Virus record (IMG/VR): IMGVR_UViG_3300024239_000011
Span: 62,001-126,000 of that record
DNA length: 64,000 nucleotides
Reading direction: 5' to 3' (one strand)
In this document: positions 3 through 52,273 of the stretch, piece after piece
How positions within the stretch are numbered: the first letter of the stretch is position 1
How the letters are laid out: every line of letters starts with the position of its first letter
Program-made: the position numbers and the translations under genes
The notes under the pieces: generated by a model
What the model was told of the DNA's origin: nothing
Seen by the model: only the letters and a program-made list of their open reading frames with translations
Database searches by the model: none

Positions 3-389
3 ATTTGTGCTGAGAATCTGAACATCAAGGGATTGATACGGAACCACAAATTGGCAAAAGCCATCGCGGATGCCAGTTGGGGCGAAATCCTCCGTCAGTT
101 GTCCTATAAGGCAATCTGGCAGGGAAAGCATTTCGTCCAAATCGACCGCTTTGATCCCTCAAGTCAGGTATGTTCGTGTTGTGGTCATCGACAGAAAATG
201 CCGCTGAATCAACGAACCTATCATTGCCCCAACTGCGGTTTGGTCATCAACAGAGACGCTAATGCGTCCCTGAATATCCGCAATTGGGGCTTTACCAATT
301 TGGTAGGGCAAGGAATGCCCGAACCGACCGCTCATGCGGTCAACGCCTGTGGAGATACCTCTGTCGGGATCAAGTCGCTCGCGGCTTGA
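3..389 (+). mobile_element. tnpB: IS200/IS605-family TnpB, C-terminal part (5' end outside window)
   Basis: ICAENLNIKG (RuvC II), CSCCG/CPNCG zinc ribbon, NRDANASLNI (RuvC III); hairpin at about 403-450 resembling an IS right end. Confidence 0.9.
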
Positions 390-6209: not shown

Positions 6210-6335
6210 ATGAATAGAATATTTCCTACTCGCGAAAGTGTCAAAAACATTTTGACCACATATGCGGTTTAGCTTACCATCCCGCAACTCGTGCCATTTT
6301 GGCTGCCAAGATTCGCTTATAAGGATAACCCGTCG

Positions 6336-7661
6336 ATGACCGTCAAATCCCATCACGATGACGATGATGAGCCAACGATGGAAGATATTCTGACAAGCAT
6401 TCGGCGTGTCCTGACCGAAGACGATGACGATGTGTTTCAAGAAAAACCAACCGCACACGATGATATCGACGCGATGTTTTCTGAAAAAATTCCACAATCT
6501 TCGACGGGGTGCCGTGGCAGCGACGACGAAGAAGCTCTCATGCGTGAATGGGCGGCAATGGCAGGGCGCAACGAACCGGATGAACCGGATGAGAATGATA
6601 CCGATGGCATGGCAGCCGAATGGGAAGCCATGCTCGGTGGTTGTGATGGGGATTGCGAACATTGCGATGACAACACCCCCATGGAGTCCACCCGAGTGTT
6701 AAATCAAGACGAAATCGATTCGCTTCTAGGATTCGATGACGACCATGGGCGCGGTGACAATATGTCTGGTATACAGTGTATTCTCAATTCCGCCCTTGTG
6801 TCATACGAACGACTTCCCATGCTGGAAGTGGTATGTGATCGTTTAGTGCGTACATTATCTACATCCTTGCGGAATTTCTTCAACGATAACGTCGAAGTGT
6901 CGCTGGACAACATTCTGTCGCTTCGTTTCGGCGACTATCTGAACTCGATTCCGCTGCCTGCCATGCTGGCGGTATTCAAAGCCGAAGAATGGGACAATCA
7001 CGGTCTATTGACCATCGATTCGTCGCTGATCTACTCAACGGTCGATGTGCTGCTGGGTGGTCGTCGCGGCACGGCGGCTATGCGCATTGAAGGTCGCCCT
7101 TACACCACCATCGAGCGTGCCTTGGTAGAACGCATGGTGCATGTCGTAATGTCGGAAATGTCTACGGCTTTCGATCCGGTGTCACCCGTAACGTTTCGTC
7201 TTGACCGGATGGAAACCAATCCGCGCTTTGCCGCCATCTCACGTCCCAATAATGCGGTAATTGTGGTCAAATTGCGCATTGACATGCAAGATCGGGGCGG
7301 GCGCATGGAATTGCTATTGCCCTATGCTACCCTAGAACCTATCCGCGAATTATTGCTTCAACATTTCATGGGAGAAAAATTTGGTCGCGACTCGATCTGG
7401 GAAACCCACTTAGCCGAAGAACTATGGAAAAGCGAGATTGAAGCTGAGGTCGTGGTTGCGGAAGCTAAATCAACTCTTAACACGATACTCAATTTGAAAG
7501 TTGGGGATACGTTAGACCTTGGTCGTCGCCGCCCACATTATAAAATGGTTTGCTCGAATGTCGTGGTCGGGCACTGCGTCAACAGTAATACCGATGATAA
7601 AGATGACATCATGGGCATGACTGATGTTTCGGTCGTCACCCTCTTCCCGAAAGGTAATTAG
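6336..7661 (+). CDS. fliM: flagellar motor switch protein FliM with PopZ-like N-terminal helix
   Basis: MAAEWEAML, RVLNQDEIDSLLGF, YERLPMLEVVCDRLVR, RFGDYLNSIPLPAML, GGRMELLLPYATLEPIRELL; N-term EPTMEDILTSIRRVLTEDD. Confidence 0.95.
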   Translation: MTVKSHHDDDDEPTMEDILTSIRRVLTEDDDDVFQEKPTAHDDIDAMFSEKIPQSSTGCRGSDDEEALMREWAAMAGRNEPDEPDENDTDGMAAEWEAMLGGCDGDCEHCDDNTPMESTRVLNQDEIDSLLGFDDDHGRGDNMSGIQCILNSALVSYERLPMLEVVCDRLVRTLSTSLRNFFNDNVEVSLDNILSLRFGDYLNSIPLPAMLAVFKAEEWDNHGLLTIDSSLIYSTVDVLLGGRRGTAAMRIEGRPYTTIERALVERMVHVVMSEMSTAFDPVSPVTFRLDRMETNPRFAAISRPNNAVIVVKLRIDMQDRGGRMELLLPYATLEPIRELLLQHFMGEKFGRDSIWETHLAEELWKSEIEAEVVVAEAKSTLNTILNLKVGDTLDLGRRRPHYKMVCSNVVVGHCVNSNTDDKDDIMGMTDVSVVTLFPKGN

Positions 7662-7662
7662 T

Positions 7663-7959
7663 ATGGATGATTTCGATATGGCTGATGTTAAGCCAGCCCC
7701 GGAACGAATCACGGCGAAACATCTGGAAGCTGTTTACGATATTCCAGTAACCGTGCGGGCAGTCCTCGGTAAAGCAACTCTACAAGTGAACCAGCTTCTC
7801 AAGCTTGGACGCGGTGCAGTCATTGAGATTGACCGCAAGGTTGGTGAGGCAGTGGATATTTACGTCAATGACCGGTTAGTCGCTCGTGGTGAAGTGGTCG
7901 TGGTGGAAGATCGCCTGGGCATCACTATGACGGAAATCATCAAGACGGATCGCGATTAA
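7663..7959 (+). CDS. fliN: flagellar motor switch protein FliN
   Basis: LEAVYDIPV.V.AVLG...LLKLGRGAVIEIDRKVGEAVDIYVNDRLVARGEVVVVEDRLGITMTEI. Confidence 0.95.
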   Translation: MDDFDMADVKPAPERITAKHLEAVYDIPVTVRAVLGKATLQVNQLLKLGRGAVIEIDRKVGEAVDIYVNDRLVARGEVVVVEDRLGITMTEIIKTDRD

Positions 7960-8186
7960 TGACAGATGGTATCTATGACGTTTCATTGGAAGCTATGGTG
8001 ATCCTGGGCACCGCCACACTTCCCATTTCGCAACTTCTTAAACTCGGTCGCGGCGCCATCATCGAGCTTGATCGCAAAGTCAATGACCCCGTTGATGTGG
8101 TGATCAACAACAAAACCGTGGCAAAAGCCGAAGTGGTGGTTATTGAACACAATCTGGGTATTACCATCACTGAGATGCTGAAGTAA
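7959..8186 (+). CDS. second, short FliN/SpoA-domain protein
   Basis: VILGTATLPISQLLKLGRGAIIELDRKVNDPVDV; stop/start overlap with fliN. Confidence 0.88.
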   Translation: MTDGIYDVSLEAMVILGTATLPISQLLKLGRGAIIELDRKVNDPVDVVINNKTVAKAEVVVIEHNLGITITEMLK

Positions 8187-8219
8187 AAAAGAAGCCCCAT
8201 TAGTACGGGGCTTCTTTTT
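8187..8219. terminator. bidirectional intrinsic terminator
   Basis: AAAA-GAAGCCCC-loop-GGGGCTTC-TTTTT. Confidence 0.85.
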
Positions 8220-9008: not shown

Positions 9009-9508
9009 TTTTTTACCTGTGCAGCCAGTGCCTCAACTGCTTGATGCATCCGAATAAGGTCATTCTCCAACTTAGCAAACCCAGGATGAGGGACAAATTG
9101 CGGGGGTGGGGGTAATGTGGGTGGGGCATTGATTGTTATCGGTACTGTCGGGGCGGGCGGTGGTGTATTCGGCTGTACGATCACCGGGGCGCGTTCTACC
9201 GGGGCAATTTTTACCACATCCACCTTCCCAATGGGGACCAGTGGTTGAACTACAATTGTAGTAGTGTTTGGTTTCACGTTGGGGGGTATTGGCACCACTT
9301 TGACCAACGGAACTGTACCGGGGTTTGGCGAAACCACTTGTTGCGGTGATTCTGTTCCAAACACCGAAGAACCGGCAACCAGCGCCACAATGATGGCACT
9401 GATCATAAAGACCATACCACTAAAATTACGCAATTGGTTAGACGCCGACACGCGGAAAACGACGAACGCCATAATTGCCGCGATGGTAATCAGGGTGAGG
9501 ATGCCCAT
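9005..9508 (-). CDS. membrane-anchored proline-rich protein
   Basis: two N-terminal hydrophobic segments, Pro/Val-rich region, short coiled coil. Confidence 0.65.
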   Translation of the reverse strand: MGILTLITIAAIMAFVVFRVSASNQLRNFSGMVFMISAIIVALVAGSSVFGTESPQQVVSPNPGTVPLVKVVPIPPNVKPNTTTIVVQPLVPIGKVDVVKIAPVERAPVIVQPNTPPPAPTVPITINAPPTLPPPPQFVPHPGFAKLENDLIRMHQAVEALAAQVKK

Positions 9509-10665
9509 TAGCGCATCCCCACTGCCTGATATACCTGATTCATTGTCTGCTGAGCAATGGTATCCACCTGCGCAGCACCCGTGGCAAGATGAGCATCGAC
9601 TACTTCCGGATGAGCGATGTATTCCCGCATGCGCTTCCCAATGGGAACAATTACGTCCACCAATGCATCAGTAACCGCAGGCTTTAATTTCCCAAAGCCC
9701 TGACCACCGAATTGGGCACAAGCTTCATCTAACGTCATCCCCCGAAGAACCGCGTAGATTGTCATAAGGTTCTTGGCACCAAGCCGACCTTCCAATCCTA
9801 CTGCCTCACCGGGCAATAGATCGGCATCCGTGGTTGCCCTCTTGATTTTCTTGGCGATTTGGTCGGCAGTGTCCGTCAGGAAAACAACTTCCTCTTCCGT
9901 TTCCATGGTGGACTTGGACATCTTCCGATCCGGATACCGCAGCGACATAATACGGGCACCGGTTTCGCTGATGATATCCTGGGGAACCGGGAAAATATCC
10001 CCGAACTGATGATTGAAAGACCGCACGATCTGGCGTGCAAGCTGAAGGTGCTGCACTTGGTCATCACCCACGGGAACATGGGTCGCCTTGTACAGCAGGA
10101 TGTCAGCAGCCATCAGCACTGGGTACATATACAAACCGGCACCGATGCTTTCGCTCTGAGTGTTCTCGTAAGCGTCAAGAATTTCGATGGCTTCCGCGCG
10201 ACGTTGTTCATCGGTGCGGGTATCGTCAAACCCTTCCTGCTGGTATAGGGTATTGCTGATGGACAGACCCGCTTCGAGAAGTTGTTCTAACTTCTCGTCC
10301 ACCGAAATACCAGCTTTCGCTTTGAACTGAGTCATTCGATTCAACCAGCCCATCCGCGCCTGGGTTGTTAATACCCAGGCAAGCTGGGAATGACCGGCGA
10401 CGCGGCTTTGTTGGAAGATCGAAGACCGCTCGGGATCGACACCGCATGCCAGATAGGCAGCCACCGTGGAACGGATGCTGTTACGCAGCACCGCTGGATT
10501 TTGCGGTACCGTGATGGCGTGAAGGTCTACGACGCAATAGATGCATTCGTGGTGATCTTGCAAGTCCACCCACTGCTTCAGAGCGCCCAGATAGTTGCCA
10601 AGGTGCAGAATTCCGCTCTGTGTCGCCGTGCCGGTAGGCTGAACTCCGGAAAATACCCTACCCAT
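9508..10665 (-). CDS. trpS: tryptophanyl-tRNA synthetase with about 50 aa insertion
   Basis: VFSGVQPTG, HLGNYLG, VDLHAIT, YPVLMAADILLY, VPVGDDQVQHL, KMSKS. Confidence 0.95.
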   Translation of the reverse strand: MGRVFSGVQPTGTATQSGILHLGNYLGALKQWVDLQDHHECIYCVVDLHAITVPQNPAVLRNSIRSTVAAYLACGVDPERSSIFQQSRVAGHSQLAWVLTTQARMGWLNRMTQFKAKAGISVDEKLEQLLEAGLSISNTLYQQEGFDDTRTDEQRRAEAIEILDAYENTQSESIGAGLYMYPVLMAADILLYKATHVPVGDDQVQHLQLARQIVRSFNHQFGDIFPVPQDIISETGARIMSLRYPDRKMSKSTMETEEEVVFLTDTADQIAKKIKRATTDADLLPGEAVGLEGRLGAKNLMTIYAVLRGMTLDEACAQFGGQGFGKLKPAVTDALVDVIVPIGKRMREYIAHPEVVDAHLATGAAQVDTIAQQTMNQVYQAVGMR

Positions 10666-10774
10666 TATCTCTACCCCGATTATGCATAAACTCATCAACA
10701 GGATGGCAGCCAAAACCGACTTTGGCAAGTTCTTTGCGGTATGGATGCCATCCAACGTTGATCGGGTGGAAGTA

Positions 10775-11548
10775 TTATCGTTCCTTCACCACGAACCTAA
10801 CTTGCTCGGAAACCCCAGTGACCTGGGCTTTGGTAACCTTGATCGGTGCGCCCAAGCCGTACTGCTCTAACGACTTGTTAAGCTCGTCTTGAATTACCGG
10901 CGCCAGTTTTTCGGTTTCGGCACGGATGTCATTCAATGGCTTGCCTTGTCCGTAGGTATACAGTCCACGCTTCACGGCATTCTTCATCAATTCGGACAGA
11001 CGAATACCCGCGAGGATGTTGAGGTCGCCGCCCCATTCAATCAAACCGATACGGAACAGATCAGGCACCGCATCCGGGGTGATCTGCACAATGGAGAACG
11101 CCGATAGGTTAACCGTCTGGTTTTCCTGGGTGATGACCTGGGTGTTGACCTCAAAACTAATCGGGGTAGTCACCGTACCCTCATAGACGACCGTCCATGG
11201 CTTCGACCAATGATAACCGGGTTGATAAACGGTACCGGTAGTCACGCCGCCGATTGTCGTTTCAAGACCAATCGAAGCAGGGGTAATGTAGAACAGCGCA
11301 AACGGGATGTTAACCAGTACCCACACACCGAAAATACTTGCAGCGGTGATGCTGGGTTCGCCCACGCTTGAATGAATGAGGTTTCGGTATCGTTCCTCAA
11401 TCCACACGGGGATCGACCCGTCCTTTTCCGTGTTCCGTTCAATCATATCGAGGCGGGCTTGTTTGGCTCTACGCAAGTTGAACAGCGCAACGCCAACACA
11501 AAACAGGATGGCGGCAAAGCCAATCACGGATACAATGGAATAAAACAT
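10775..11548 (-). CDS. SPFH/band-7 domain membrane protein
   Basis: TM segments, IGLETTIGGV...PGYHW..PW, IKVTKAQVTGV. Confidence 0.6.
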   Translation of the reverse strand: MFYSIVSVIGFAAILFCVGVALFNLRRAKQARLDMIERNTEKDGSIPVWIEERYRNLIHSSVGEPSITAASIFGVWVLVNIPFALFYITPASIGLETTIGGVTTGTVYQPGYHWSKPWTVVYEGTVTTPISFEVNTQVITQENQTVNLSAFSIVQITPDAVPDLFRIGLIEWGGDLNILAGIRLSELMKNAVKRGLYTYGQGKPLNDIRAETEKLAPVIQDELNKSLEQYGLGAPIKVTKAQVTGVSEQVRFVVKER

Positions 11549-11853
11549 GGTTCTTCTCCGAAGATGTACAGAAACGGTGAGTGTGAGAAATCTTTAAGAA
11601 ATTCGAGCATCACCCGTTTACTGTAACCAGTTTCTTGATCGAGGTCGGTTGTAATACCCACATCACCAATACACGAAGCCATGGTCACTCGTACCGTCCG
11701 ATTATTGTAGTTTGCATACAATTCAGGGATACGAACGCCCATGGCTTTCGCCTTGATTTGATAATGGGCAGGCCACCGCGCATAACGAAGGAAACGCCGC
11801 AAACAATACGGCGCCTCCATATCGTCAATGTAATCGTCGCAGTGTTTAGCCAT
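11524..11853 (-). CDS. hypothetical protein
   Basis: ORF within the operon. Confidence 0.6.
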   Translation of the reverse strand: MAKHCDDYIDDMEAPYCLRRFLRYARWPAHYQIKAKAMGVRIPELYANYNNRTVRVTMASCIGDVGITTDLDQETGYSKRVMLEFLKDFSHSPFLYIFGEEPCFIPLYP

Positions 11854-11866
11854 CAGTAGCACCGGC

Positions 11867-13072
11867 TCAGCCATTGGCGGCGACACCAACCGGCGTAGTC
11901 GCATTGACCGTCATGATGAACGGAGCATCAGCCGTGATCATCTTGGGGGCTTCGCTCTGCTTCAACGCCTCGATGGTTTCATATGCACCACGCAGCATAC
12001 CGTCCTTCAGACGCTTGTCCTCGGCTTCGTATTCCGCCTGAGTCAGCGCACGGCGCTGCATGCCCGCCTTGATCACGTCCACGGTGCCGGTGATCATGCG
12101 CAGATAAGCGTCGTTTGCCTGCTTGGCAGTCGAAGCCGAAATCAATTCCTGCTCAATGGTCTTTTGTACAGCCACCGCCGAATCCGCAGCCTGATTGGCG
12201 CTCATGACAATTACACTATTGGTGGCTTCCGTGATGGCTTGCAGACCACCGGAAGCCTGATCCAGAGCGGAACGAATGATGCAGGCGAGCATCTTGTCCT
12301 TCCAAATCGGCAGCATCCCAACCACAGCGGTGTTGATTTTGTCCGCCATGTTGTAGCACTGCATTCCCAGGTATCGGTACTCGGCAAGGGTACCAATGGT
12401 CGCCATCCGCAGACCCAGATAGTCGCCCTTCTTGCGATCCAATGCCTGAATCGATTCGTTGATACGAGCAACGTTCTCCATAATGCCCATATCGTTGGCG
12501 CCCTGCGCTTTATCAGACCATTCCTTGAGTTCGGATTGGGCGTCAATCAGCGCAACTTCAATCGCGGCGATCAGGATGCTGTAGGTGTGGTAGTCCTGAA
12601 CCTTCTCCGCATAAGCGAGCTTCAGCAGTTCGATGTACCGCATCAGTTCCGCAGTCTTGGTATCGAGTTCGGTGGCAACCCGCAGGCATGACCCATGTAC
12701 CGTTTCAAACTCGGAACGGAAACTTTCGATGGCAGCTTCGACACCACCCTTCAGGTCCATCCACTTCTTTGCGATCCATCCCATATTGGGATGCGGAAGT
12801 TTGGAAACGTCCACGCCGCGCACCTTGTTGGACATGTCGGTAAGCTTGTCACCGATTTCCTTGATGTCCTTGGTCTTGAATTTGGACAACGGGTCGTCCG
12901 CAACGTTGGAAGGACGACGCAACCGGTCCATACCAATGTTCAGCAAGCTGCGCTGGTCGTGGATGTTGATGTTCTGACGTACTGCCTTAACCTGATCGCG
13001 CACAGCAGGCGTCATATTGTCATATTGGGTCACCGCCAGGGCACGACCATCCACCGTATTAAGCGCACTCAT
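11867..13072 (-). CDS. TelA/KlaA toxic-anion resistance family protein
   Basis: long coiled coil, ADKINTAVVGMLPIWKD, ITEATNSVI; GGAGG RBS 7 nt before MSALNTVD. Confidence 0.85.
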   Translation of the reverse strand: MSALNTVDGRALAVTQYDNMTPAVRDQVKAVRQNINIHDQRSLLNIGMDRLRRPSNVADDPLSKFKTKDIKEIGDKLTDMSNKVRGVDVSKLPHPNMGWIAKKWMDLKGGVEAAIESFRSEFETVHGSCLRVATELDTKTAELMRYIELLKLAYAEKVQDYHTYSILIAAIEVALIDAQSELKEWSDKAQGANDMGIMENVARINESIQALDRKKGDYLGLRMATIGTLAEYRYLGMQCYNMADKINTAVVGMLPIWKDKMLACIIRSALDQASGGLQAITEATNSVIVMSANQAADSAVAVQKTIEQELISASTAKQANDAYLRMITGTVDVIKAGMQRRALTQAEYEAEDKRLKDGMLRGAYETIEALKQSEAPKMITADAPFIMTVNATTPVGVAANG

Positions 13073-13304
13073 TGATTGTCCTCCACCATTGGCCAAATAC
13101 CATGCATTAGCAATTTTCGCTTTCTTCATTGCCTCTTGTTCCAAGATGGCAAGAATTTGGGCTGTTTTACCCGGTTGGTTCTTTGCTTTGAAACGCGCAA
13201 TTCGACGTGTTATGAACAGAGGGCGAAGAATTGCGTCAAAACGCTCGTAACGGATACGAGCGTTTTCCGCCGCCGCCCGCTCCCGTGCTTTTGATGCAAT
13301 TCGA

Positions 13305-13913
13305 TTACTCACCATTAACACCTTTACGATTTGCCATTTCTACAAACACGTTTTGATCCACATATAAACCAATCACATCACCGCGTAAAAGCTGATCACG
13401 CTGAGCCTCGAAAACACCTTTCATGTGTGCCAGGGTTTCTGGAAACATATCCAAGGCACGTTTTGCATCTTTGTCCATGCCTCGATAGTTGGCATTTACC
13501 GCAAGGAAGTTTTCAAGAATTTTAACTGTCTCGGTCAGTGTATATGTGTCGAAATTAGTCTGTAAAATCGAACGCGGGTCTTGCTTAAACGTCTCCATGA
13601 TTTGATCCGCTAACGCAGCAAGATCAAGAACATGACTCCGTTGTATACGAGAAAATCCTTTGTTATCCGCCAATACCCGGATGCGCTCGGCATTTTGCAC
13701 ACCGTTCTTGATTGCCTTGATAATCTCGGCGCGATCTGCCCCTTTGGTCTCGGGAAACTCCAAATCGCTCGGTTTCTCGTGATATACTAGATAGAGAACC
13801 ACCCAGGAAACGAGTCCACCACCAATGCAATACACAAGTGGGAATTCCAAGAGGAACCAAAACCCAAAGGTAAGTGCCAGACAGGCAATTCCGGTACCAA
13901 TGGCAGTGGACAC
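13305..13913 (-). CDS. XpaC-like (5-bromo-4-chloroindolyl phosphate hydrolysis family) membrane protein
   Basis: two N-terminal TM helices, IMETFKQDP, C-terminal helical bundle; canonical position upstream of telA. Confidence 0.7.
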   Translation of the reverse strand: MSTAIGTGIACLALTFGFWFLLEFPLVYCIGGGLVSWVVLYLVYHEKPSDLEFPETKGADRAEIIKAIKNGVQNAERIRVLADNKGFSRIQRSHVLDLAALADQIMETFKQDPRSILQTNFDTYTLTETVKILENFLAVNANYRGMDKDAKRALDMFPETLAHMKGVFEAQRDQLLRGDVIGLYVDQNVFVEMANRKGVNGE

Positions 13914-19154: not shown

Positions 19155-19248
19155 TGGAGGAAAGGGTCGGACTCGAACCGACATACCCCTGCGTTTGCAG
19201 GCACCTGATTTGCACTCAAGGACCGTCGCCTATTCCGGTCACCTTTCC
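19155..19248 (-). tRNA. tRNA-Cys(GCA) with long class II variable arm
   Basis: GGAAAGG/CCTTTCC, U73, loop GT-GCA-AA, arm CCTGC-AAAC-GCAGG. Confidence 0.8.
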
Positions 19249-23529: not shown

Positions 23530-25083
23530 TTACCAGTGTGCCAAGATCAGCGGCGTGTCTTGATAAGACTGCCAAATTCGTTCGGTGATATATGGCATCA
23601 TCGGATGTGCCAGACGTAGGCATTGATCGAGGCACCGCATAATCGTTCCCAATGCATCCATGTCGTTCTGATCGTACAAACGATCCTTGGACGCCTCGAT
23701 GTACCAATCGCAGAACTCGTGTTTGAAGAACAATCGGAACGCATCCGCCGCTGCTCGGTAATCAAATGCATCCAGGGCATTTGCCATAGTACGTTTTGTT
23801 TGATCGAGTGATGCGAGGATACGCAGATCATCAGGATGTTGAGACTCGTTCCAGGCAGATGGACGACCCATCCGGTCGAAATGACTGAGACAGAACCGCG
23901 AGGCTTGCCACAGTTTGTTTGCGAACCGTTTTGCAGAATCGAAAATATCGTTCGACAATCGGATATCCTGCCCGGCGGTACCGTTCTCCAAGAACCCGAA
24001 CCGCAAAGCGTCACATCCGAATTTTTCGATGATTAGCAGAGGATCAATGCCGTTTCCCTTCGACTTACACATTTTTTCCCCATTGGCGTCACGAATGATG
24101 CCGTGGAGATAGATGGTGTCAAATGCCATCTGATCGGTCAGGGCAAGCCCCATCATCAACATACGGGCACACCAGAAGAATAGGATGTCCGCTGCCGTCT
24201 CGATCATACTCGCCGGGTAGAAAGTTCGCAGATCGGGCGTGTCGTTTGGCCAGCCCAAAATGGCGAAGGGCCAAATTGCGGACGAGAACCATGTATCAAG
24301 GACATCGTGATCTTGTCGGATGTCATCCCCCAGAATAGCTCTGGCATCCGCCTCTGTACGTGCCGCGCAAAAAGCACCAGAACCGTTGTACCAAATCGGG
24401 ATACGGTGTCCCCACCAAATCTGACGCGAAATACACCACGGCTCGATGTTTTCGAGGAAATGACAGAAGGTTTTCCCTTCATATTCCGGGATAATCTTTA
24501 GTTCACCCGCATGATAACGTGCAAGAAGGTCGGTAGCCAGTTGACTAGTGTCCAACCACCACTGCCCATCCTGACGGTAAATCAATCCTTTTTCGAAACA
24601 CCGGTTGAACGCCTCTAGGGTGGCGGTGGGATGTTCGGGGCTAAGCGTATACCATTCGCGCGACCAATCACAGCTTGCGCCCAGACGGCGAATTTGCTGG
24701 GTGATGCGCCCACCCGTCGTTTTCTGCCATGCATCTGCTTTGGCAAAATACTGGTCACGGGTTGGTTCGGTAATCCCTTCGGCGGCAAGCTCAGCCTTAA
24801 TCTTAGCATCGGTTGCCAAACCCGCATGATCAGTACCGGGCTGCCATAGTGCATTAAAGCCCTGCATGCGCTTGTACCGGATCGTCGTATCCTGAAGGGT
24901 GGTGAAAAGTGCATGCCCCATGTGCAGTTGCCCAGTGATATTGGGCGGCGGCATTGGGATGTTGAAGGCTGGTGCCTCTGGGTTCATGCTTGGCTTAAAA
25001 AAGCCATTATTTTCCCAATGCGCGTAGATGTTCGGTTCTTCGGTTTTATAGTCGAAGTTCCGAGTTAGTTTGTTACGTCCCAC
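23530..25083 (-). CDS. valS: compact valyl-tRNA synthetase lacking CP1 editing domain and C-terminal coiled coil
   Basis: PPPNITGQLHMGHAL, PGTDHAG, WCISRQIWWGHRIP, DVLDTWFSS, DILFFW, KMCKSKGN; only 517 aa; start uncertain. Confidence 0.92.
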   Translation of the reverse strand: MGRNKLTRNFDYKTEEPNIYAHWENNGFFKPSMNPEAPAFNIPMPPPNITGQLHMGHALFTTLQDTTIRYKRMQGFNALWQPGTDHAGLATDAKIKAELAAEGITEPTRDQYFAKADAWQKTTGGRITQQIRRLGASCDWSREWYTLSPEHPTATLEAFNRCFEKGLIYRQDGQWWLDTSQLATDLLARYHAGELKIIPEYEGKTFCHFLENIEPWCISRQIWWGHRIPIWYNGSGAFCAARTEADARAILGDDIRQDHDVLDTWFSSAIWPFAILGWPNDTPDLRTFYPASMIETAADILFFWCARMLMMGLALTDQMAFDTIYLHGIIRDANGEKMCKSKGNGIDPLLIIEKFGCDALRFGFLENGTAGQDIRLSNDIFDSAKRFANKLWQASRFCLSHFDRMGRPSAWNESQHPDDLRILASLDQTKRTMANALDAFDYRAAADAFRLFFKHEFCDWYIEASKDRLYDQNDMDALGTIMRCLDQCLRLAHPMMPYITERIWQSYQDTPLILAHW

Positions 25084-34421: not shown

Positions 34422-34505
34422 TGGCGATCCTGAGAGGATTCGAACCCCCCTTTTCAGCATCCGACTACGGTTAAGCGGGTAGAAGCCGCCCCCGGCTACA
34501 GGATC
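34422..34505 (-). tRNA. rearranged tRNA-Arg(UCU)-like gene
   Basis: perfect acceptor and T arms; anticodon arm 8 nt after acceptor; GGAT-GC-TGAAAA after it. Confidence 0.7.
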
Positions 34506-36916: not shown

Positions 36917-37008
36917 TGGCTCCCACTTGAGGTTTCGAACCTCACCCCGCATCGCTGCGAGACTTCCGGTTAACAGCCGGATACCTTCACCAAGCCGGTC
37001 CAGTGGGA
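36917..37008 (-). tRNA. tRNA-Asn(GUU) with long variable arm
   Basis: TCCGG-CT-GTT-AA-CCGGA; arm CTCGCA-GCGA-TGCGGG. Confidence 0.85.
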
Positions 37009-49440: not shown

Positions 49441-51117
49441 CTATTCCTCATTATCGTCCGACATGTCTCCGTCCACATCATCAACGAATTCATCGGTGAG
49501 TAGGGAAGAAGCACCAGTAACGCTGCTGATATCCATACCAATTTGCTTGGCAAGGGCATCAACTGCCGGGCTTTGCAGGCGGAAATTCAAAAGACCATCG
49601 ATCACCTGATTGGCGACGCTACCACCGGTAGCCGTAGGCTTACCATCAGTGCCGGTCATCACGCCACCGACACCGCCCAAACCGGACAACATGTGGACGC
49701 GCACGCCTTCGATGTTCTCAAGCGGCTTAACCATCTGTTCGAGAATGCTGGGCATCTGCTCGATAGCGGTCAGGCGGACGCGGTTGGACAGAACCTTGAT
49801 GTCCAGAGTATTTTCGGCTTCGTTCAAAGCACGACGACCAGCAGCTTCAACTTCAAAGTCCTTCGCTTTGGCTTCCGCTTTGATCTGAATGGTTTCGGCT
49901 TCGGCTTCCGCCTCGATAATCAATGCAGCAGCGCGATCTTCTGCCGCAGCCTTTTCAGCAGCGGCAGCGACCTTGATACCCACGGCATCCTGTTCGGCTA
50001 CCTTGGTCGCTTCGATCACGGCGATGTTCTTGTTACGCTCGGCAATCGCAGTTTCCTTGGCGGTAACCACCGCTTCTTCTGCGGCGACCGCAGAAGCTCG
50101 TGCCTTGGCAGCATCCGCTTGTGCCTTCGAGTTCTCTTCAGACTTCTTGGCGATGGCGATCTTCTGATCCTGCTGGGCGAGTTCAATTGCCTTGGCGGCG
50201 TCGATCTCGTTTTCCTTCACCTTCTGGTTCTTGGCAATACGGGCTGCCTCAGTTGCCTGCTCAGCCGTAATACGGGCAATTTCAGCGGCACGGTTCTGCT
50301 CGGCTTCCTGCTCAGCAATCACACGCTGCTGTTCCGCACGACGGGTGGCAACTTCCCGTTCTTGTGCCATCTGCGCATACTCTTGTTCACGAGAAATTTC
50401 CAAGCTGCGCTGATTGGCTTTGAGGTTTTCTTCCTCAATCGCAACACGGGTTTTCGCCTGGATTTCGTTGCGCTGCCGATTTTTTTCTTCGGTAATGGAA
50501 GTCAGCTTTGCCAAACCCTCAGCGTCAAACGCATTGTTCGGATTGAAAAATTCCGCAGGAGTCTGGTCAAGACCGGTCAATGAAACCGACTCAAGTTCCA
50601 GACCATTCTTGGCAAGGTCTTCGGCAACCGTAGTCTGCACCCGCTGGACAAAAGTCACGCGGTTCTCATGGAGTTCCTGCATTTCCATCTGGGCAGCGAC
50701 CGAACGCAGGGCGTCCACAAACTTACCTTCGACCAACGCCGACAATTCACGCGGCTCCATGGTACGGCGACCAAGGGTTTGAGCGGCAGTCGCAATACCG
50801 TCACTATCAGGCTTCACCCGGACATAGAATTCCGCCATCACATCAACGCGCAGGCGATCCTTGGTAATCAAAGCTTCCTGGCGTTTACGCTCGACCTGAA
50901 GTCGAAGAGTTTGCATGTTCACGTCAATGACTTCGTGAAACATCGGGATCACAACGGCGCCGCCGTCCTTGACCACTTTCTGACCACCAGCACCGGTACG
51001 GACAAATGCCCGTTCCTTAGTCGCACGGCGATAAAGCTTCATCAGCACCAGACCGAAGCCAATAAACCCAACAAACAACACACCAACAACCGTGGCAATA
51101 AAACCCCAGTTCTCCAT
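49441..51117 (-). CDS. flotillin-like YqiK-family protein
   Basis: N-terminal TM, AFVRTGAGG.KVV.DGG, ITKDRLRVDV, GLELESVSLT, long Ala/Glu coiled coil. Confidence 0.9.
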   Translation of the reverse strand: MENWGFIATVVGVLFVGFIGFGLVLMKLYRRATKERAFVRTGAGGQKVVKDGGAVVIPMFHEVIDVNMQTLRLQVERKRQEALITKDRLRVDVMAEFYVRVKPDSDGIATAAQTLGRRTMEPRELSALVEGKFVDALRSVAAQMEMQELHENRVTFVQRVQTTVAEDLAKNGLELESVSLTGLDQTPAEFFNPNNAFDAEGLAKLTSITEEKNRQRNEIQAKTRVAIEEENLKANQRSLEISREQEYAQMAQEREVATRRAEQQRVIAEQEAEQNRAAEIARITAEQATEAARIAKNQKVKENEIDAAKAIELAQQDQKIAIAKKSEENSKAQADAAKARASAVAAEEAVVTAKETAIAERNKNIAVIEATKVAEQDAVGIKVAAAAEKAAAEDRAAALIIEAEAEAETIQIKAEAKAKDFEVEAAGRRALNEAENTLDIKVLSNRVRLTAIEQMPSILEQMVKPLENIEGVRVHMLSGLGGVGGVMTGTDGKPTATGGSVANQVIDGLLNFRLQSPAVDALAKQIGMDISSVTGASSLLTDEFVDDVDGDMSDDNEE

Positions 51118-51134
51118 AGAACTAACTCCTAAGA

Positions 51135-51761
51135 TTAGTATTTTTGAGCACGAAAGTGGTTTTCACCCAGACACTTAGTCAGGAGTATGCGTGACCCCTG
51201 CTCAATTTCGCCGTCATTGGGTTCCACTCGCAGATAGTGAACTTGACCATACTGATCTGTACATTTGGCTTCCGCCGGAAACCCCGGACGTGCAGTTCCA
51301 ATGGTAATCCAAGCTTCTCCACCAACGAAATCACGGATGGTCACTGCACTGGTGATTTCTTTTGGAAAGATTCGCGCGGTAATCACGCAGATAATCTTCG
51401 CCGGGACAACTGCAACCGGAACCACCAACAACCCGGCGATCCACACCGGAACCATTCCCCCGAAAATACCAGCGGCGATCCACTGAACAGTCCAACCGAT
51501 CAACCCGTAGCACATCATGAACGCCATCAGAATGATAAGGAACGGAACCTTACCGAAGTACATCCACCCAAGGAAATGAGTCAACACCCCAGCATCAACG
51601 TGAATATCAACATCCACATCAGCATCGGTATCCATCCCCGCAAATTCACCAACAGAGTGATCCACCGATAACCCGAATGCTTGGAGTACGGTGATCGCAA
51701 ACATAAGTCCAATTGCAACCGTAAACGGCACAACCGAATCATTGGTAAAGAATTCAAACAT
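51135..51761 (-). CDS. YqiJ-like membrane protein (NfeD-like OB fold)
   Basis: FTVAIGLMF, WMYFGKVPFL, G.A...IG.A..G.PAEA...DQYGQ.HY; precedes flotillin. Confidence 0.85.
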   Translation of the reverse strand: MFEFFTNDSVVPFTVAIGLMFAITVLQAFGLSVDHSVGEFAGMDTDADVDVDIHVDAGVLTHFLGWMYFGKVPFLIILMAFMMCYGLIGWTVQWIAAGIFGGMVPVWIAGLLVVPVAVVPAKIICVITARIFPKEITSAVTIRDFVGGEAWITIGTARPGFPAEAKCTDQYGQVHYLRVEPNDGEIEQGSRILLTKCLGENHFRAQKY

Positions 51762-51847: not shown

Positions 51848-52273
51848 TTACCCCAACATACGCAGGATAAACGGAACGCTTGGGTCACGAACTTCAATGA
51901 TTGCGTTCCACGGCACGAATACCGAAGTTGCAACCCCACTGAAGTAAATTACCACCGTGAACCCTTCATCAGAAATTTCCAGATCATGGAACTGGTTCTG
52001 AAGCACGATGACAGTTTCCCCACGCAAATGAAGGGGGAACCCCGATACCCCGAAAATCGTGGTATCGAGGGTGATGTAGAAATGGTGTCCGTGATCATCA
52101 ACATTAGGATCATCACGGAAATTGGATAAGACCTCACGAATCATCCGAATGTTTGCAAGATGGTGTTCTCGCCGGAAGATACCGTCGTAATCAAATGCAG
52201 TGGGACTGTTCCCGGTCGCCGCTGATTTGTCTACCTGGGATTTTTTACCAGGGAAATGAATTACGTTTGTCAT
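51848..52273 (-). CDS. sspB: alphaproteobacterial-type SspB ClpXP adaptor, core domain only
   Basis: HHFYIT.DT...GV...IVLQNQF.DL....F.V...FSG.....VPW.AI....DPSV.F.L. Confidence 0.85.
   Translation of the reverse strand: MTNVIHFPGKKSQVDKSAATGNSPTAFDYDGIFRREHHLANIRMIREVLSNFRDDPNVDDHGHHFYITLDTTIFGVSGFPLHLRGETVIVLQNQFHDLEISDEGFTVVIYFSGVATSVFVPWNAIIEVRDPSVPFILRMLG

What the first reader, a model, noticed from the sequence alone, without database searches (positions are those of the whole stretch)
6336..8219. Phage fliM-fliN-fliN operon with a PopZ-like helix fused to FliM
Seen: a self-contained three-gene unit (RBS, overlapping stops/starts, own terminator) among phage-type genes, with no other flagellar genes. 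FliM begins EPTMEDILTSIRRVLTEDD (6369-6425), closely matching the Caulobacter PopZ N-terminus as I recall it (EPTMEEILASIRRIISEDD). The second half of the FliM C-terminal SpoA domain looks degenerate. Known: this PopZ helix binds polar clients such as ParA/ParB and ChpT; FliM/FliN form the C-ring. Inference: the phage may alter or poison the host C-ring and link it to polar hub clients, e.g. to stop motility or exclude flagellotropic competitors.
Basis: partly seen in the sequence, partly recalled or inferred. Interest (0 to 1): 0.9.

Follow-up and report, generated by a model that had tools for sequence, protein, structure and literature searches.

The report
Phage flagellar switch genes with PopZ helix
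A very large phage carries its own copies of three bacterial flagellar motor-switch genes (fliM, fliN, fliN), and has added to FliM the short docking helix of the cell-pole organiser PopZ, so the phage probably interferes with how its host controls swimming and pole signalling.

Summary
Window 6336-8219 (+) holds a compact fliM-fliN-fliN cassette with a Shine-Dalgarno site and a strong terminator. It sits among minus-strand phage genes: T4 gp30.3-like, HNH endonucleases, 37 tRNAs.

FliM scores above the NCBIfam cut-off. Residues 12-30 match the N-terminal client-binding helix of PopZ, and PopZ is the only PDB hit.

The FliM core is about 77-86% identical to Magnetospirillum-type (Rhodospirillales) FliM. 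It has phage-like GC (50% against 63%) and dN/dS of about 0.05, so it is a kept, adapted gene and not a chimera.

None of 160 related cellular or metagenomic fliM loci has the helix or an adjacent fliN. The FliM C-terminal FliN-type domain diverges more than in any cellular homologue. FliN1 is orthodox; FliN2 is a divergent minimal copy.

A new point: other proteins on phage- or plasmid-like contigs string the same helix together with FliM N-terminal peptides but lack the FliM body.

Most likely this is a phage-adapted switch module that enters or competes with the host C-ring and adds a docking site for PopZ clients. The outcome (stop, keep or rewire motility) is untested.

It is a new variant of known parts. 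Interest is high.

The parts
6252..6280 (+). Weak sigma-70-like promoter candidate (TTGACC-17-TACCAT) in the 125-nt gap before fliM
   Evidence: 9 of 12 matches. Shuffled sequence gives similar counts, so this is a candidate only.
6322..6326 (+). Shine-Dalgarno AAGGA, 10 nt before the fliM ATG
   Evidence: Sequence read.
6336..7661 (+). fliM, 441 aa, flagellar motor switch protein with a phage-specific N-terminal extension
   Evidence: Gene callers of two assemblies also give 441 aa.
6369..6479 (+). PopZ-type N-terminal module: client-binding helix (residues 12-30, nt 6369-6425) plus an acidic tail (to residue 48)
   Evidence: PopZ_fam profile 1-37, E = 8e-7. PDB 6XRY PopZ, E = 3.4e-4. AlphaFold helix at residues 15-26, the most confident stretch of the model.
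6525..6641 (+). Two short 'EW(A/E)AM' helices (residues 64-77 and 92-102) shared with Rhodospirillales FliM N-terminal extensions; function unknown
   Evidence: Invariant in alignments A1 and A5. Predicted helices at 62-75 and 92-100.
6687..6740 (+). FliM N-terminal CheY-P-binding peptide (residues 118-135, contains LNQDEIDSLL)
   Evidence: 94% identical to the cellular consensus, with no change at 13 cell-invariant columns. The CheY-binding role is established knowledge of FliM.
6786..7355 (+). FliM middle domain (residues 151-340) with the GGxG motif (LLGGRRG)
   Evidence: Pfam PF02154 positions 5-192 of 192. Residues 136-340 are 84% identical to the cellular consensus. dN 0.083, dS about 1.6.
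7416..7658 (+). FliM C-terminal FliN-type (SpoA) domain. The first half is recognisable. The second half (residues 401-441, nt 7536-7658) is remodelled, with the conserved GRMGRKG stretch lost.
   Evidence: dN 0.6-0.7 for residues 361-395.
7663..7959 (+). fliN1, 98 aa, orthodox FliN
   Evidence: TIGR02480 101.9 bits. 78% median and up to 89% identity to Rhodospirillales FliN.
7959..8186 (+). fliN2, 75 aa, a bare SpoA domain and divergent paralogue; start overlaps the fliN1 stop (TAATG)
   Evidence: TIGR02480 87.4 bits. 53% identical to FliN1 and at most 53.5% to any of 120 FliN homologues.
8186..8219 (+). Intrinsic terminator hairpin (13 pairs, 6 G-C) followed by a T-run. It lies between the cassette and the converging minus-strand genes.

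Best explanation
This is a host-derived but phage-adapted flagellar switch cassette, built like a moron: its own start signals and terminator, and opposite in orientation to its neighbours.

**Shown**
- The phage encodes a FliM whose CheY-P-binding peptide and middle (FliG-binding) domain are kept almost host-identical by purifying selection.
- It also encodes one host-like FliN and one divergent minimal FliN.
- The FliM domain that normally pairs with FliN has been remodelled.
- A copy of the PopZ client-binding helix has been added to the FliM N-terminus.

**Inferred**
- In an infected Magnetospirillum-like (Rhodospirillales) cell, the three products form a FliM-FliN1-FliN2 sub-complex.
- That sub-complex exchanges into, or competes with, the host C-ring at the flagellated pole.
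- The added helix gives this subunit a second docking site beside the CheY-P site. It could bind proteins that normally dock on PopZ: CpdR-type receiver proteins, ChpT, RcdA, ParA and ParB.
- The phage thereby re-wires or uncouples control of the motor and polar signalling.
- Whether the net effect is to stop, lock or maintain swimming cannot be told from sequence.
For: **Family identity.**

**Origin**
- 77-78% identity overall to Magnetospirillum-type FliM, 86% in the core against M. gryphiswaldense, and up to 83% to the best genome locus.

**The gene is kept and adapted**
- GC 50% and GC3 53%, against 63% and 84% for the M. gryphiswaldense gene.
- dN/dS about 0.05 over residues 118-360.
- No change at any cell-invariant column of the CheY peptide, and 15 mostly conservative changes at 151 invariant columns of the middle domain.

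**Features specific to the phage copy**
- Only 1 of 160 fliM loci (80 metagenomic, 80 GTDB species) has the helix or an adjacent fliN, and that locus is the phage itself.
- In M. gryphiswaldense, fliM lies in a fliL-fliM-DUF6468 cluster without fliN.

**The helix is the PopZ module**
-.
- PopZ E7-E23 binds CpdR, RcdA and ChpT (PMC11519897).
- S22P abolishes ParA binding and E12K/R19E abolishes ParB binding (PMC10711552). The phage has D17, R24 and T27 at these positions.

**Remodelled base**
- Identity of the C-terminal domain to the cellular consensus is 0.41 and 0.14 for its two halves. The lowest cellular values are 0.49 and 0.20.
- FliN2 is 53% identical to everything it was compared with.

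**Phage setting**
- The contig is an IMG/VR UViG of 543 kb.
- The window matches 78 PHROG families, including gp30.3, RNA ligase, HNH endonucleases and tail-like proteins, and carries 37 tRNAs.
- A second assembly is 100% identical over 17.7 kb across the cassette.
Against: - No experiment and no complex prediction supports co-assembly with the host ring.
- The AlphaFold model of FliM was poor (mean pLDDT 40). The fold of the remodelled C-terminal domain is therefore unknown, and it might no longer bind any FliN.
- The cassette is a singleton. No related phage carrying it was found, so conservation within phages cannot be shown.
- Proteins with the same helix plus FliM N-terminal peptides but no FliM body (P0123, P0124, P0125) suggest that ring assembly may not be needed for the function.
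- The helix's partners are known only for Caulobacter PopZ.
- The host is inferred only from sequence similarity.
- FliMs more distant than the 160 nearest loci were not surveyed for the helix.
Confidence: 0.45

Rival explanations
1. **Soluble multivalent decoy.** The working part is the disordered N-terminal chain of four short helices: the PopZ helix, two EW-AM helices and the CheY-P peptide. The FliM body and the FliNs only provide a stable, oligomeric carrier. The protein soaks up CheY-P and PopZ clients in the cytoplasm and does not enter the ring.
For: - A phmmer search of residues 1-58 against 1.84 billion proteins found ten helix-array proteins.
- P0124 is collinear with phage FliM residues 15-81 at 49% identity. 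It repeats the 18-residue CheY peptide exactly but has no FliM middle domain.
- P0125 has two helices plus the EEALMREWAAM motif.
- P0123 has three helices plus LNEDEINSLLGFE, and sits on a phage-like contig.
- P0127 lies next to CysRS and TyrRS genes on a 28% GC contig.
- The remodelled FliM C-terminus may weaken ring assembly.
Against: - The FliM middle domain is under strong purifying selection (dN/dS about 0.05) and keeps the GGxG motif. That is hard to explain if it were only a carrier.
- An orthodox FliN1 is also kept.
- The origin of P0124 is unknown: it comes from a 2-kb contig.
Confidence: 0.25
2. **Simple maintenance gene (auxiliary gene).** The phage replaces labile, exchanging switch subunits so that the infected cell keeps swimming and steering, for example by magneto-aerotaxis, after host gene expression is shut off. 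The helix only helps delivery to the pole.
For: - The core and FliN1 are near host-identical.
- The window carries many other host-like maintenance genes: tRNAs, tRNA synthetases, TelA, flotillin and SspB.
- FliM and FliN exchange in working motors (established knowledge).
Against: - A pure replacement part would not need an added PopZ helix, a remodelled FliN-binding domain or a second divergent FliN.
- The terminal branch of phage FliM is about 27 times the median (1.14 against 0.042).
- The PopZ helix binds clients. It is not known to bind PopZ itself, so it is not an obvious pole-targeting tag.
Confidence: 0.15
3. **Motor poison for superinfection exclusion.** The altered FliM/FliN base jams rotation or flagellar export, so that flagellum-dependent phages cannot infect the already infected cell.
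For: - The remodelled C-terminal domain and the divergent FliN2 could make a faulty ring base.
- Phages are known to block surface organelles used as receptors, for example pilus inhibitors (own knowledge).
Against: - No sequence evidence bears on the outcome.
- The scheme does not explain the PopZ helix.
- A lytic huge phage gains little from exclusion late in infection. Neither the timing of expression nor the lifestyle is known.
Confidence: 0.1
4. **Inert passenger or assembly artefact.** A piece of host DNA was joined in by misassembly, or is a decaying recent capture.
For: - The cassette is a singleton.
- The only GenBank 'phage' with fliM (PhiMa05/MaAM05) has been questioned as a phage (PMC13623518).
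Against: - GC and GC3 match the phage and not the donor clade.
- Two assemblies agree base for base across both junctions.
- The reading frames are intact, the genes are tightly coupled, and dN/dS is about 0.05.
- The flanking genes are phage-type.
Confidence: 0.03

Closest known systems
Cellular FliM of Magnetospirillum and other Rhodospirillales (for example M. gryphiswaldense, P0013)
   Same: - CheY-P peptide, the two EW-AM helices, the middle domain and the linker are shared.
- 86% identity in the core.
   Different: - The phage protein has 50 extra N-terminal residues including the PopZ helix.
- Its C-terminal FliN-type domain is remodelled and lacks the GRMGRKG stretch.
- GC is 50% against 63%.
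- It is encoded next to two fliN genes, not between fliL and DUF6468.
PopZ N-terminal client-binding helix (Caulobacter PopZ residues 7-23, PDB 6XRY; NCBIfam NF052660)
   Same: - 14 of 19 residues are identical.
- The helix has the same position near the N-terminus and the same acidic flanks.
- The positions aligned to E12, R19 and S22 are conserved in kind.
   Different: - There is no PopZ linker or C-terminal self-assembly domain.
- The whole-protein score is 30 bits against a cut-off of 125.
- This is therefore a borrowed module and not a PopZ.
[quoted passage not shown]
   Same: It is the only record among 50,697 GenBank phage records with a FliM match.
   Different: - Only 22% identical.
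- It forms part of a larger cellular-type cluster.
- The record's status as a phage is disputed (PMC13623518).
- The paper does not mention a PopZ helix.
Helix-array proteins on mobile elements (P0122-P0125, P0127) and the viral zinc-finger-plus-helix protein at L009:5674-6126
   Same: - They carry the same PopZ-type helix (PopZ_fam E from 5e-5 to 5e-26).
- Some carry the same FliM N-terminal peptides.
   Different: - They have no FliM middle or C-terminal domain.
- The helix is present in 2-3 copies in most of them.
- The L009 protein instead pairs the helix with a ZitP-type zinc finger.
Short-motif mimicry by viruses of eukaryotes, and phage inhibitors of pili (own knowledge)
   Same: The logic is the same: a virus copies a host docking peptide, or targets a motility organelle.
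   Different: Here the copied peptide is grafted onto a complete, host-derived structural subunit of the flagellar motor.

Membership tests
FliM (TIGR01397 / PF02154) | Whole-protein score above the curated cut-off | tested here: met
   TIGR01397 scores 275.9 bits against a cut-off of 219.6. PF02154 E = 8.7e-66.
FliM (TIGR01397 / PF02154) | N-terminal CheY-P-binding peptide (EIDAL-type) | tested here: met
   Residues 118-135 contain LNQDEIDSLL and are identical to cellular relatives at all 13 invariant columns.
FliM (TIGR01397 / PF02154) | Middle domain with the GGxG motif | tested here: met
   Pfam positions 5-192 of 192. LLGGRRG is invariant in the alignment.
FliM (TIGR01397 / PF02154) | Complete C-terminal FliN-type (SpoA) domain | tested here: inconclusive
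   PF01052 covers positions 1-55 of 73, E = 1.9e-7. The second half does not align to FliN or to cellular FliM. The structure model is too poor to judge.
FliM (TIGR01397 / PF02154) | Assembly into the C-ring with FliG and FliN | not testable with these tools
   This needs an experiment or a multimer prediction.
FliN (TIGR02480) | SpoA domain scoring above the curated cut-off | tested here: met
   FliN1 scores 101.9 bits and FliN2 87.4 bits against a cut-off of 84.05.
FliN (TIGR02480) | Close kinship to host-clade FliN | tested here: met
   Met for FliN1 (median 78%, up to 89% identity). Not met for FliN2 (at most 53.5%).
PopZ (NF052660) | N-terminal client-binding helix | tested here: met
   Profile positions 1-37, E = 8e-7. 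PDB 6XRY E = 3.4e-4.
PopZ (NF052660) | C-terminal self-assembly domain and whole-protein score above the cut-off | tested here: not met
   30.4 bits against a cut-off of 125, with no match beyond profile position 37. The protein is not a PopZ.
Phage moron / auxiliary gene cassette | Autonomous unit with its own terminator, embedded among phage genes, with host-derived content adapted to the phage | tested here: met
   - Terminator.
- Opposite orientation to its neighbours.
- GC adapted to the phage.
- The promoter is only a weak consensus match.

The most novel reading that the evidence does not exclude
Mobile elements of Alphaproteobacteria (huge phages, smaller phages, conjugative plasmids) use copies of the PopZ client-binding helix as a portable docking peptide to tap into the host's polar hub and receiver-protein network.
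- The helix occurs alone, in tandem arrays, combined with FliM N-terminal peptides, or, as here, grafted onto a whole motor subunit.
- Cellular TIR and caspase proteins that carry arrays of the same helix could be decoys that sense such attackers.
- This would be short-motif mimicry in bacterial viruses, aimed at cell polarity.
Probability: 0.3. Interest if true: 0.85.

Novelty: new variant of a known kind. Interest (0 to 1): 0.78.

Why it matters
**Why it is unusual**
- Phages are known to use flagella as receptors. A phage that carries structural genes of the motor's switch complex has not been credibly described.
- The one GenBank case is disputed. Four literature searches found no report of this kind.

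**What it would show if the cassette works as proposed**
- A virus can insert its own subunit into a bacterial rotary motor.
- That subunit would carry an extra docking site taken from the polar organiser PopZ.

**What it would offer**
- A natural tool to study how C-ring composition and PopZ-client docking control motility and polarity.
- A test of whether the PopZ helix is a general, transferable address tag.
- A flag on two conserved but uncharacterised 'EW-AM' helices in the N-terminal extension of Rhodospirillales FliM.

Tried and rejected
- **Frameshift as the cause of the odd FliM C-terminus.** Rejected: the other two frames are full of stops and do not encode the missing motif.
- **Chimera with host DNA.** Rejected on composition and on agreement between two assemblies.
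- **Related phages carrying the cassette.** Three scans of IMG/VR with FliM queries (the single protein, the full alignment, the core alignment) and one scan of JGI metagenomes returned only the same contig plus cellular genes.
- **Other proteins sharing the N-terminal 58 residues.** The word-based search found only the protein itself. It has low sensitivity for a 19-residue helix.
- **Strict back-translated helix pattern in IMG/VR.** It hit three contigs: this one, L009's contig, and L174. L174 turned out to be a cellular popZ locus next to a TolC-like gene.
- **AlphaFold of FliM with a 60-sequence alignment.** Mean pLDDT was 40, so no fold search was run and the model was used only for helix positions.
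- **Profile comparison of FliM_C with FliN.** Only the first half aligned.
- **Synteny between the window and the contigs that carry helix-array proteins.** Nothing matched beyond the motifs themselves.
- **Placing phage FliM in a tree of 80 genome FliMs.** Its position was unresolved because the branch is very long. The host can therefore be narrowed only to Rhodospirillales of the Magnetospirillum type.
Full report
**1. What is in the sequence**

The plus strand of window 6336-8219 holds three tightly packed genes.
- fliM is at 6336-7661 (441 aa). It matches Pfam FliM (E = 8.7e-66) and passes the NCBIfam equivalog model TIGR01397 (275.9 bits, cut-off 219.6).
- fliN1 is at 7663-7959 (98 aa) and fliN2 at 7959-8186 (75 aa). 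Both pass TIGR02480.

An AAGGA box lies 10 nt before the fliM start. fliN1 starts 1 nt after the fliM stop, and fliN2 overlaps the fliN1 stop as TAATG. A 13-pair hairpin followed by a T-run at 8186-8219 is the only terminator-like site in the region. All neighbouring genes run on the other strand. Only one of the two gene junctions truly overlaps.

**2. The PopZ-type helix**

Residues 12-48 of FliM match positions 1-37 of the NCBIfam PopZ family profile (E = 8e-7). A search of residues 1-58 against all PDB sequences returns Caulobacter PopZ (6XRY) as the only meaningful hit (E = 3.4e-4). 14 of the 19 helix residues are identical.

In PopZ this stretch is the client-binding site.
- Residues E7-E23 shift on binding the receiver protein CpdR. 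The same site binds RcdA and ChpT (PMC11519897).
- S22P abolishes ParA binding, and E12K/R19E abolishes ParB binding (PMC10711552).
- The phage helix has D, R and T at these three aligned positions.

The rest of PopZ is absent: there is no linker and no self-assembly domain. The whole-protein score is 30 bits against a cut-off of 125. This is a borrowed module, not a PopZ.

**3. Where the genes came from**

The best database relatives are FliMs of Magnetospirillum and other Rhodospirillales, at 77-78% identity over the shared 76% of the protein. Identity reaches 86% in the core.

Cellular proteins begin at about residue 50 of the phage protein. The first 50 residues, including the helix, are extra. 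Downstream, phage and cell share three features:
- two short helices with an 'EW(A/E)AM' core;
- the CheY-P-binding peptide;
- the middle domain with its GGxG motif.

FliN1 is 78% (median) to 89% identical to Rhodospirillales FliN. FliN2 is 53% identical to FliN1 and at most 53.5% identical to any of 120 homologues. It consists of the bare SpoA domain.

**4. Not a chimera and not decaying**

- Phage fliM has 50% GC and 53% GC3, like the window as a whole (48%). The M. gryphiswaldense gene has 63% and 84%.
- Over residues 118-360, dN is 0.083 and dS about 1.6, a ratio of about 0.05.
- No cell-invariant column of the CheY peptide is changed. 15 of 151 invariant columns in the middle domain carry mostly conservative changes.
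- A second assembly (ENA, 869,618 bp) is 100% identical to the window over 17.7 kb spanning both junctions.

**5. What is special to the phage copy**

I extracted fliM from 160 loci: 80 JGI metagenome contigs and 80 GTDB species genomes. Only the phage locus has the helix anywhere in the FliM reading frame. Only the phage locus has a fliN-like gene within the 3-6 kb of flanking DNA held for each locus. In M. gryphiswaldense, fliM sits between fliL and a DUF6468 gene, with no fliN nearby.

In a tree, phage FliM has a terminal branch of 1.14, against a median of 0.042. Its position is unresolved.

The excess change is concentrated in the C-terminal FliN-type domain.
- Identity to the cellular consensus is 0.41 and 0.14 for the two halves. 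The lowest cellular values are 0.49 and 0.20.
- dN is 0.6-0.7 over residues 361-395.
- The conserved GRMGRKG stretch is gone.
- No frameshift explains this.
- Pfam and hhalign recognise only the first half.

**6. Is it a phage?**

- The contig is an IMG/VR viral genome of 543 kb.
- The window holds 37 tRNA genes.
- It also holds tRNA synthetase genes, TelA and flotillin.
- A T4 gp30.3-like gene lies directly upstream of fliM (E = 1.1e-47).
- RNA ligase and many HNH homing endonucleases are present.
- The window matches 78 PHROG families, among them tail and baseplate-like families.
- No capsid or terminase gene lies in the window, and I could not read the rest of the genome.

The only GenBank 'phage' with a FliM match is PhiMa05/MaAM05, at 22% identity. 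A published comment argues that this record is not a phage (PMC13623518). Four literature searches found no report of phage fliM/fliN or of phage PopZ mimicry.

**7. A lead beyond the finding**

A full phmmer search of residues 1-58 against 1.84 billion proteins gave ten hits. All carry the helix, nine of them in two or more copies, and the nine that were scanned all hit the PopZ profile.

Three of them also carry FliM N-terminal peptides but no FliM body.
- P0124 is collinear with phage residues 15-81 at 49% identity, from the helix through the spacer to the EEALMREWAAMAG motif. It repeats the 18-residue CheY peptide exactly. The helix-plus-FliM-N-terminus fusion therefore exists in at least two genes.
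- P0125 has two helices and the EW-AM motif. It lies on a 58.7 kb contig with topoisomerase, an FtsH-like gene and a shufflon-type gene.
- P0123 has three helices plus LNEDEINSLLGFE, on a phage-like contig.

Other contexts:
- P0127 lies beside CysRS, TyrRS and an intein on a 28% GC contig.
- P0122 lies in a type IV secretion / ParM context.
- A 17.7 kb IMG/VR contig encodes a protein with a ZitP-type zinc finger and one helix. It has the same Cys and Trp spacing as the PopZ-binding finger of ZitP (PMC5182065).
- P0121 (TIR domain) and P0126 (caspase) are probably cellular effectors with helix arrays.

The strict helix pattern is rare in IMG/VR: three contigs, one of which is a cellular popZ locus.

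**8. How it most likely works**

What is shown is the anatomy and the pattern of selection. Everything below is inferred.

The conserved middle domain and CheY-P peptide imply that the protein still has to fit FliG, neighbouring FliM subunits and CheY-P. In other words, it acts at or on the host switch. The remodelled FliN-binding domain, together with a second divergent FliN, suggests a phage-specific base for this subunit.

The added helix supplies a second docking site of a kind known to bind a CheY-like receiver (CpdR), ChpT, RcdA, ParA and ParB. The poor AlphaFold model (pLDDT 40) still places four short helices in an otherwise unstructured N-terminus, at residues 15-26, 62-75, 92-100 and 124-130. 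This fits a chain of docking peptides.

My best reading (0.45) is a phage subunit that enters or competes with the host C-ring and re-wires motor and polar signalling. The rivals are:
- a soluble decoy that soaks up CheY-P and PopZ clients (0.25), favoured by the body-less relatives;
- simple replacement of motor parts to keep the infected cell swimming (0.15);
- a motor poison for excluding flagellum-dependent phages (0.10);
- an inert passenger or artefact (0.03).

**9. Limits**

- The cassette is a singleton.
- The host is inferred from similarity only.
- FliMs more distant than the nearest 160 loci were not surveyed for the helix.
- No complex prediction or experiment was possible.
- Partners of the helix are known only for Caulobacter PopZ.

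**10. Verdict**

The parts belong to known families (FliM, FliN, the PopZ helix). Three things are new: their combination, their presence on a huge phage, and the remodelled FliM/FliN base. I class it as a new variant of a known kind, with high interest.

Noticed in passing
window 15583-61585, minus strand: 37 tRNA genes, all on the minus strand and interspersed with small ORFs and HNH homing endonucleases. Several are unusually long (83-94 nt, for example Cys 19155-19248 and Asn 36917-37008). One has a four-base anticodon 'ctta' (34422-34505), which could be a frameshift-suppressor-like tRNA or a miscall.
   Followed up: no
window 51851-52273 (-): An SspB-like ClpXP adaptor gene (Pfam SspB, E = 1.4e-17). 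There is a thematic link: the PopZ helix binds the ClpXP adaptors CpdR and RcdA in Caulobacter.
   Followed up: partly
window 9508-10755 (-), 23530-25083 (-): A tryptophanyl-tRNA synthetase gene whose Pfam match is split into two stretches. Also a 516-aa class I (Ile/Leu/Val/Met-type) synthetase that matches only part of the catalytic-domain profile.
   Followed up: no
window 10775-13321 (-), 49441-51761 (-): A set of membrane-stress-type genes: Band 7, TelA, and flotillin paired with a YqiJ/NfeD-like gene.
   Followed up: no
window 33-389 (+); L004:1719-4054: IS605/TnpB (Cas12f-like TNB domain) and IS1595 transposase genes lie just upstream of the window start in the same phage.
   Followed up: no
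P0121, P0126 (no loci fetched): A TIR-domain protein and an EACC1-type caspase each carry C-terminal arrays of 2-4 PopZ-type helices. They may be defence effectors that are tethered to PopZ clients or that act as decoys for them.
   Followed up: partly
L009:5674-6126 (+), IMGVR_UViG_3300002231_000922: A small viral protein joins a ZitP-type MJ0042 zinc finger (Cys 6, 9, 28 and 31, Trp 35) to one PopZ-type helix. The finger class binds PopZ (PMC5182065), so the protein might bind itself head to tail or bridge PopZ.
   Followed up: partly
window 6525-6641; alignments A1 and A5: FliMs of Rhodospirillales share an N-terminal extension with two conserved helices, (D/E)EEALMxEWAAMAG and MAAEWEAMLG, placed before the CheY peptide. 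I found no described function. The first motif recurs in the body-less proteins P0124 and P0125.
   Followed up: partly
whole contig: ENA ERZ27245855 k141_178484 against IMGVR_UViG_3300024239_000011: The same phage region lies on an 869,618-bp contig in one assembly and a 543,035-bp contig in another. A 2025 preprint gives 841 kb as the largest huge-phage genome (abstract of 10.1101/2025.02.27.640493). The true genome size is worth checking.
   Followed up: no
L174 (IMGVR_UViG_3300050512_000279): This 'viral' contig is a 60% GC cellular popZ locus next to a TolC-like efflux gene. It is probably misclassified, or is flanking DNA of a prophage.
   Followed up: partly
P0023, P0028, P0036, P0055, L093, L117: Magnetospirillum-type FliMs are labelled as Solirubrobacterales, Actinomycetota, Bacteroidota, Patescibacteria or Marinimicrobia in public MAGs. 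These contigs are most likely mis-binned.
   Followed up: no
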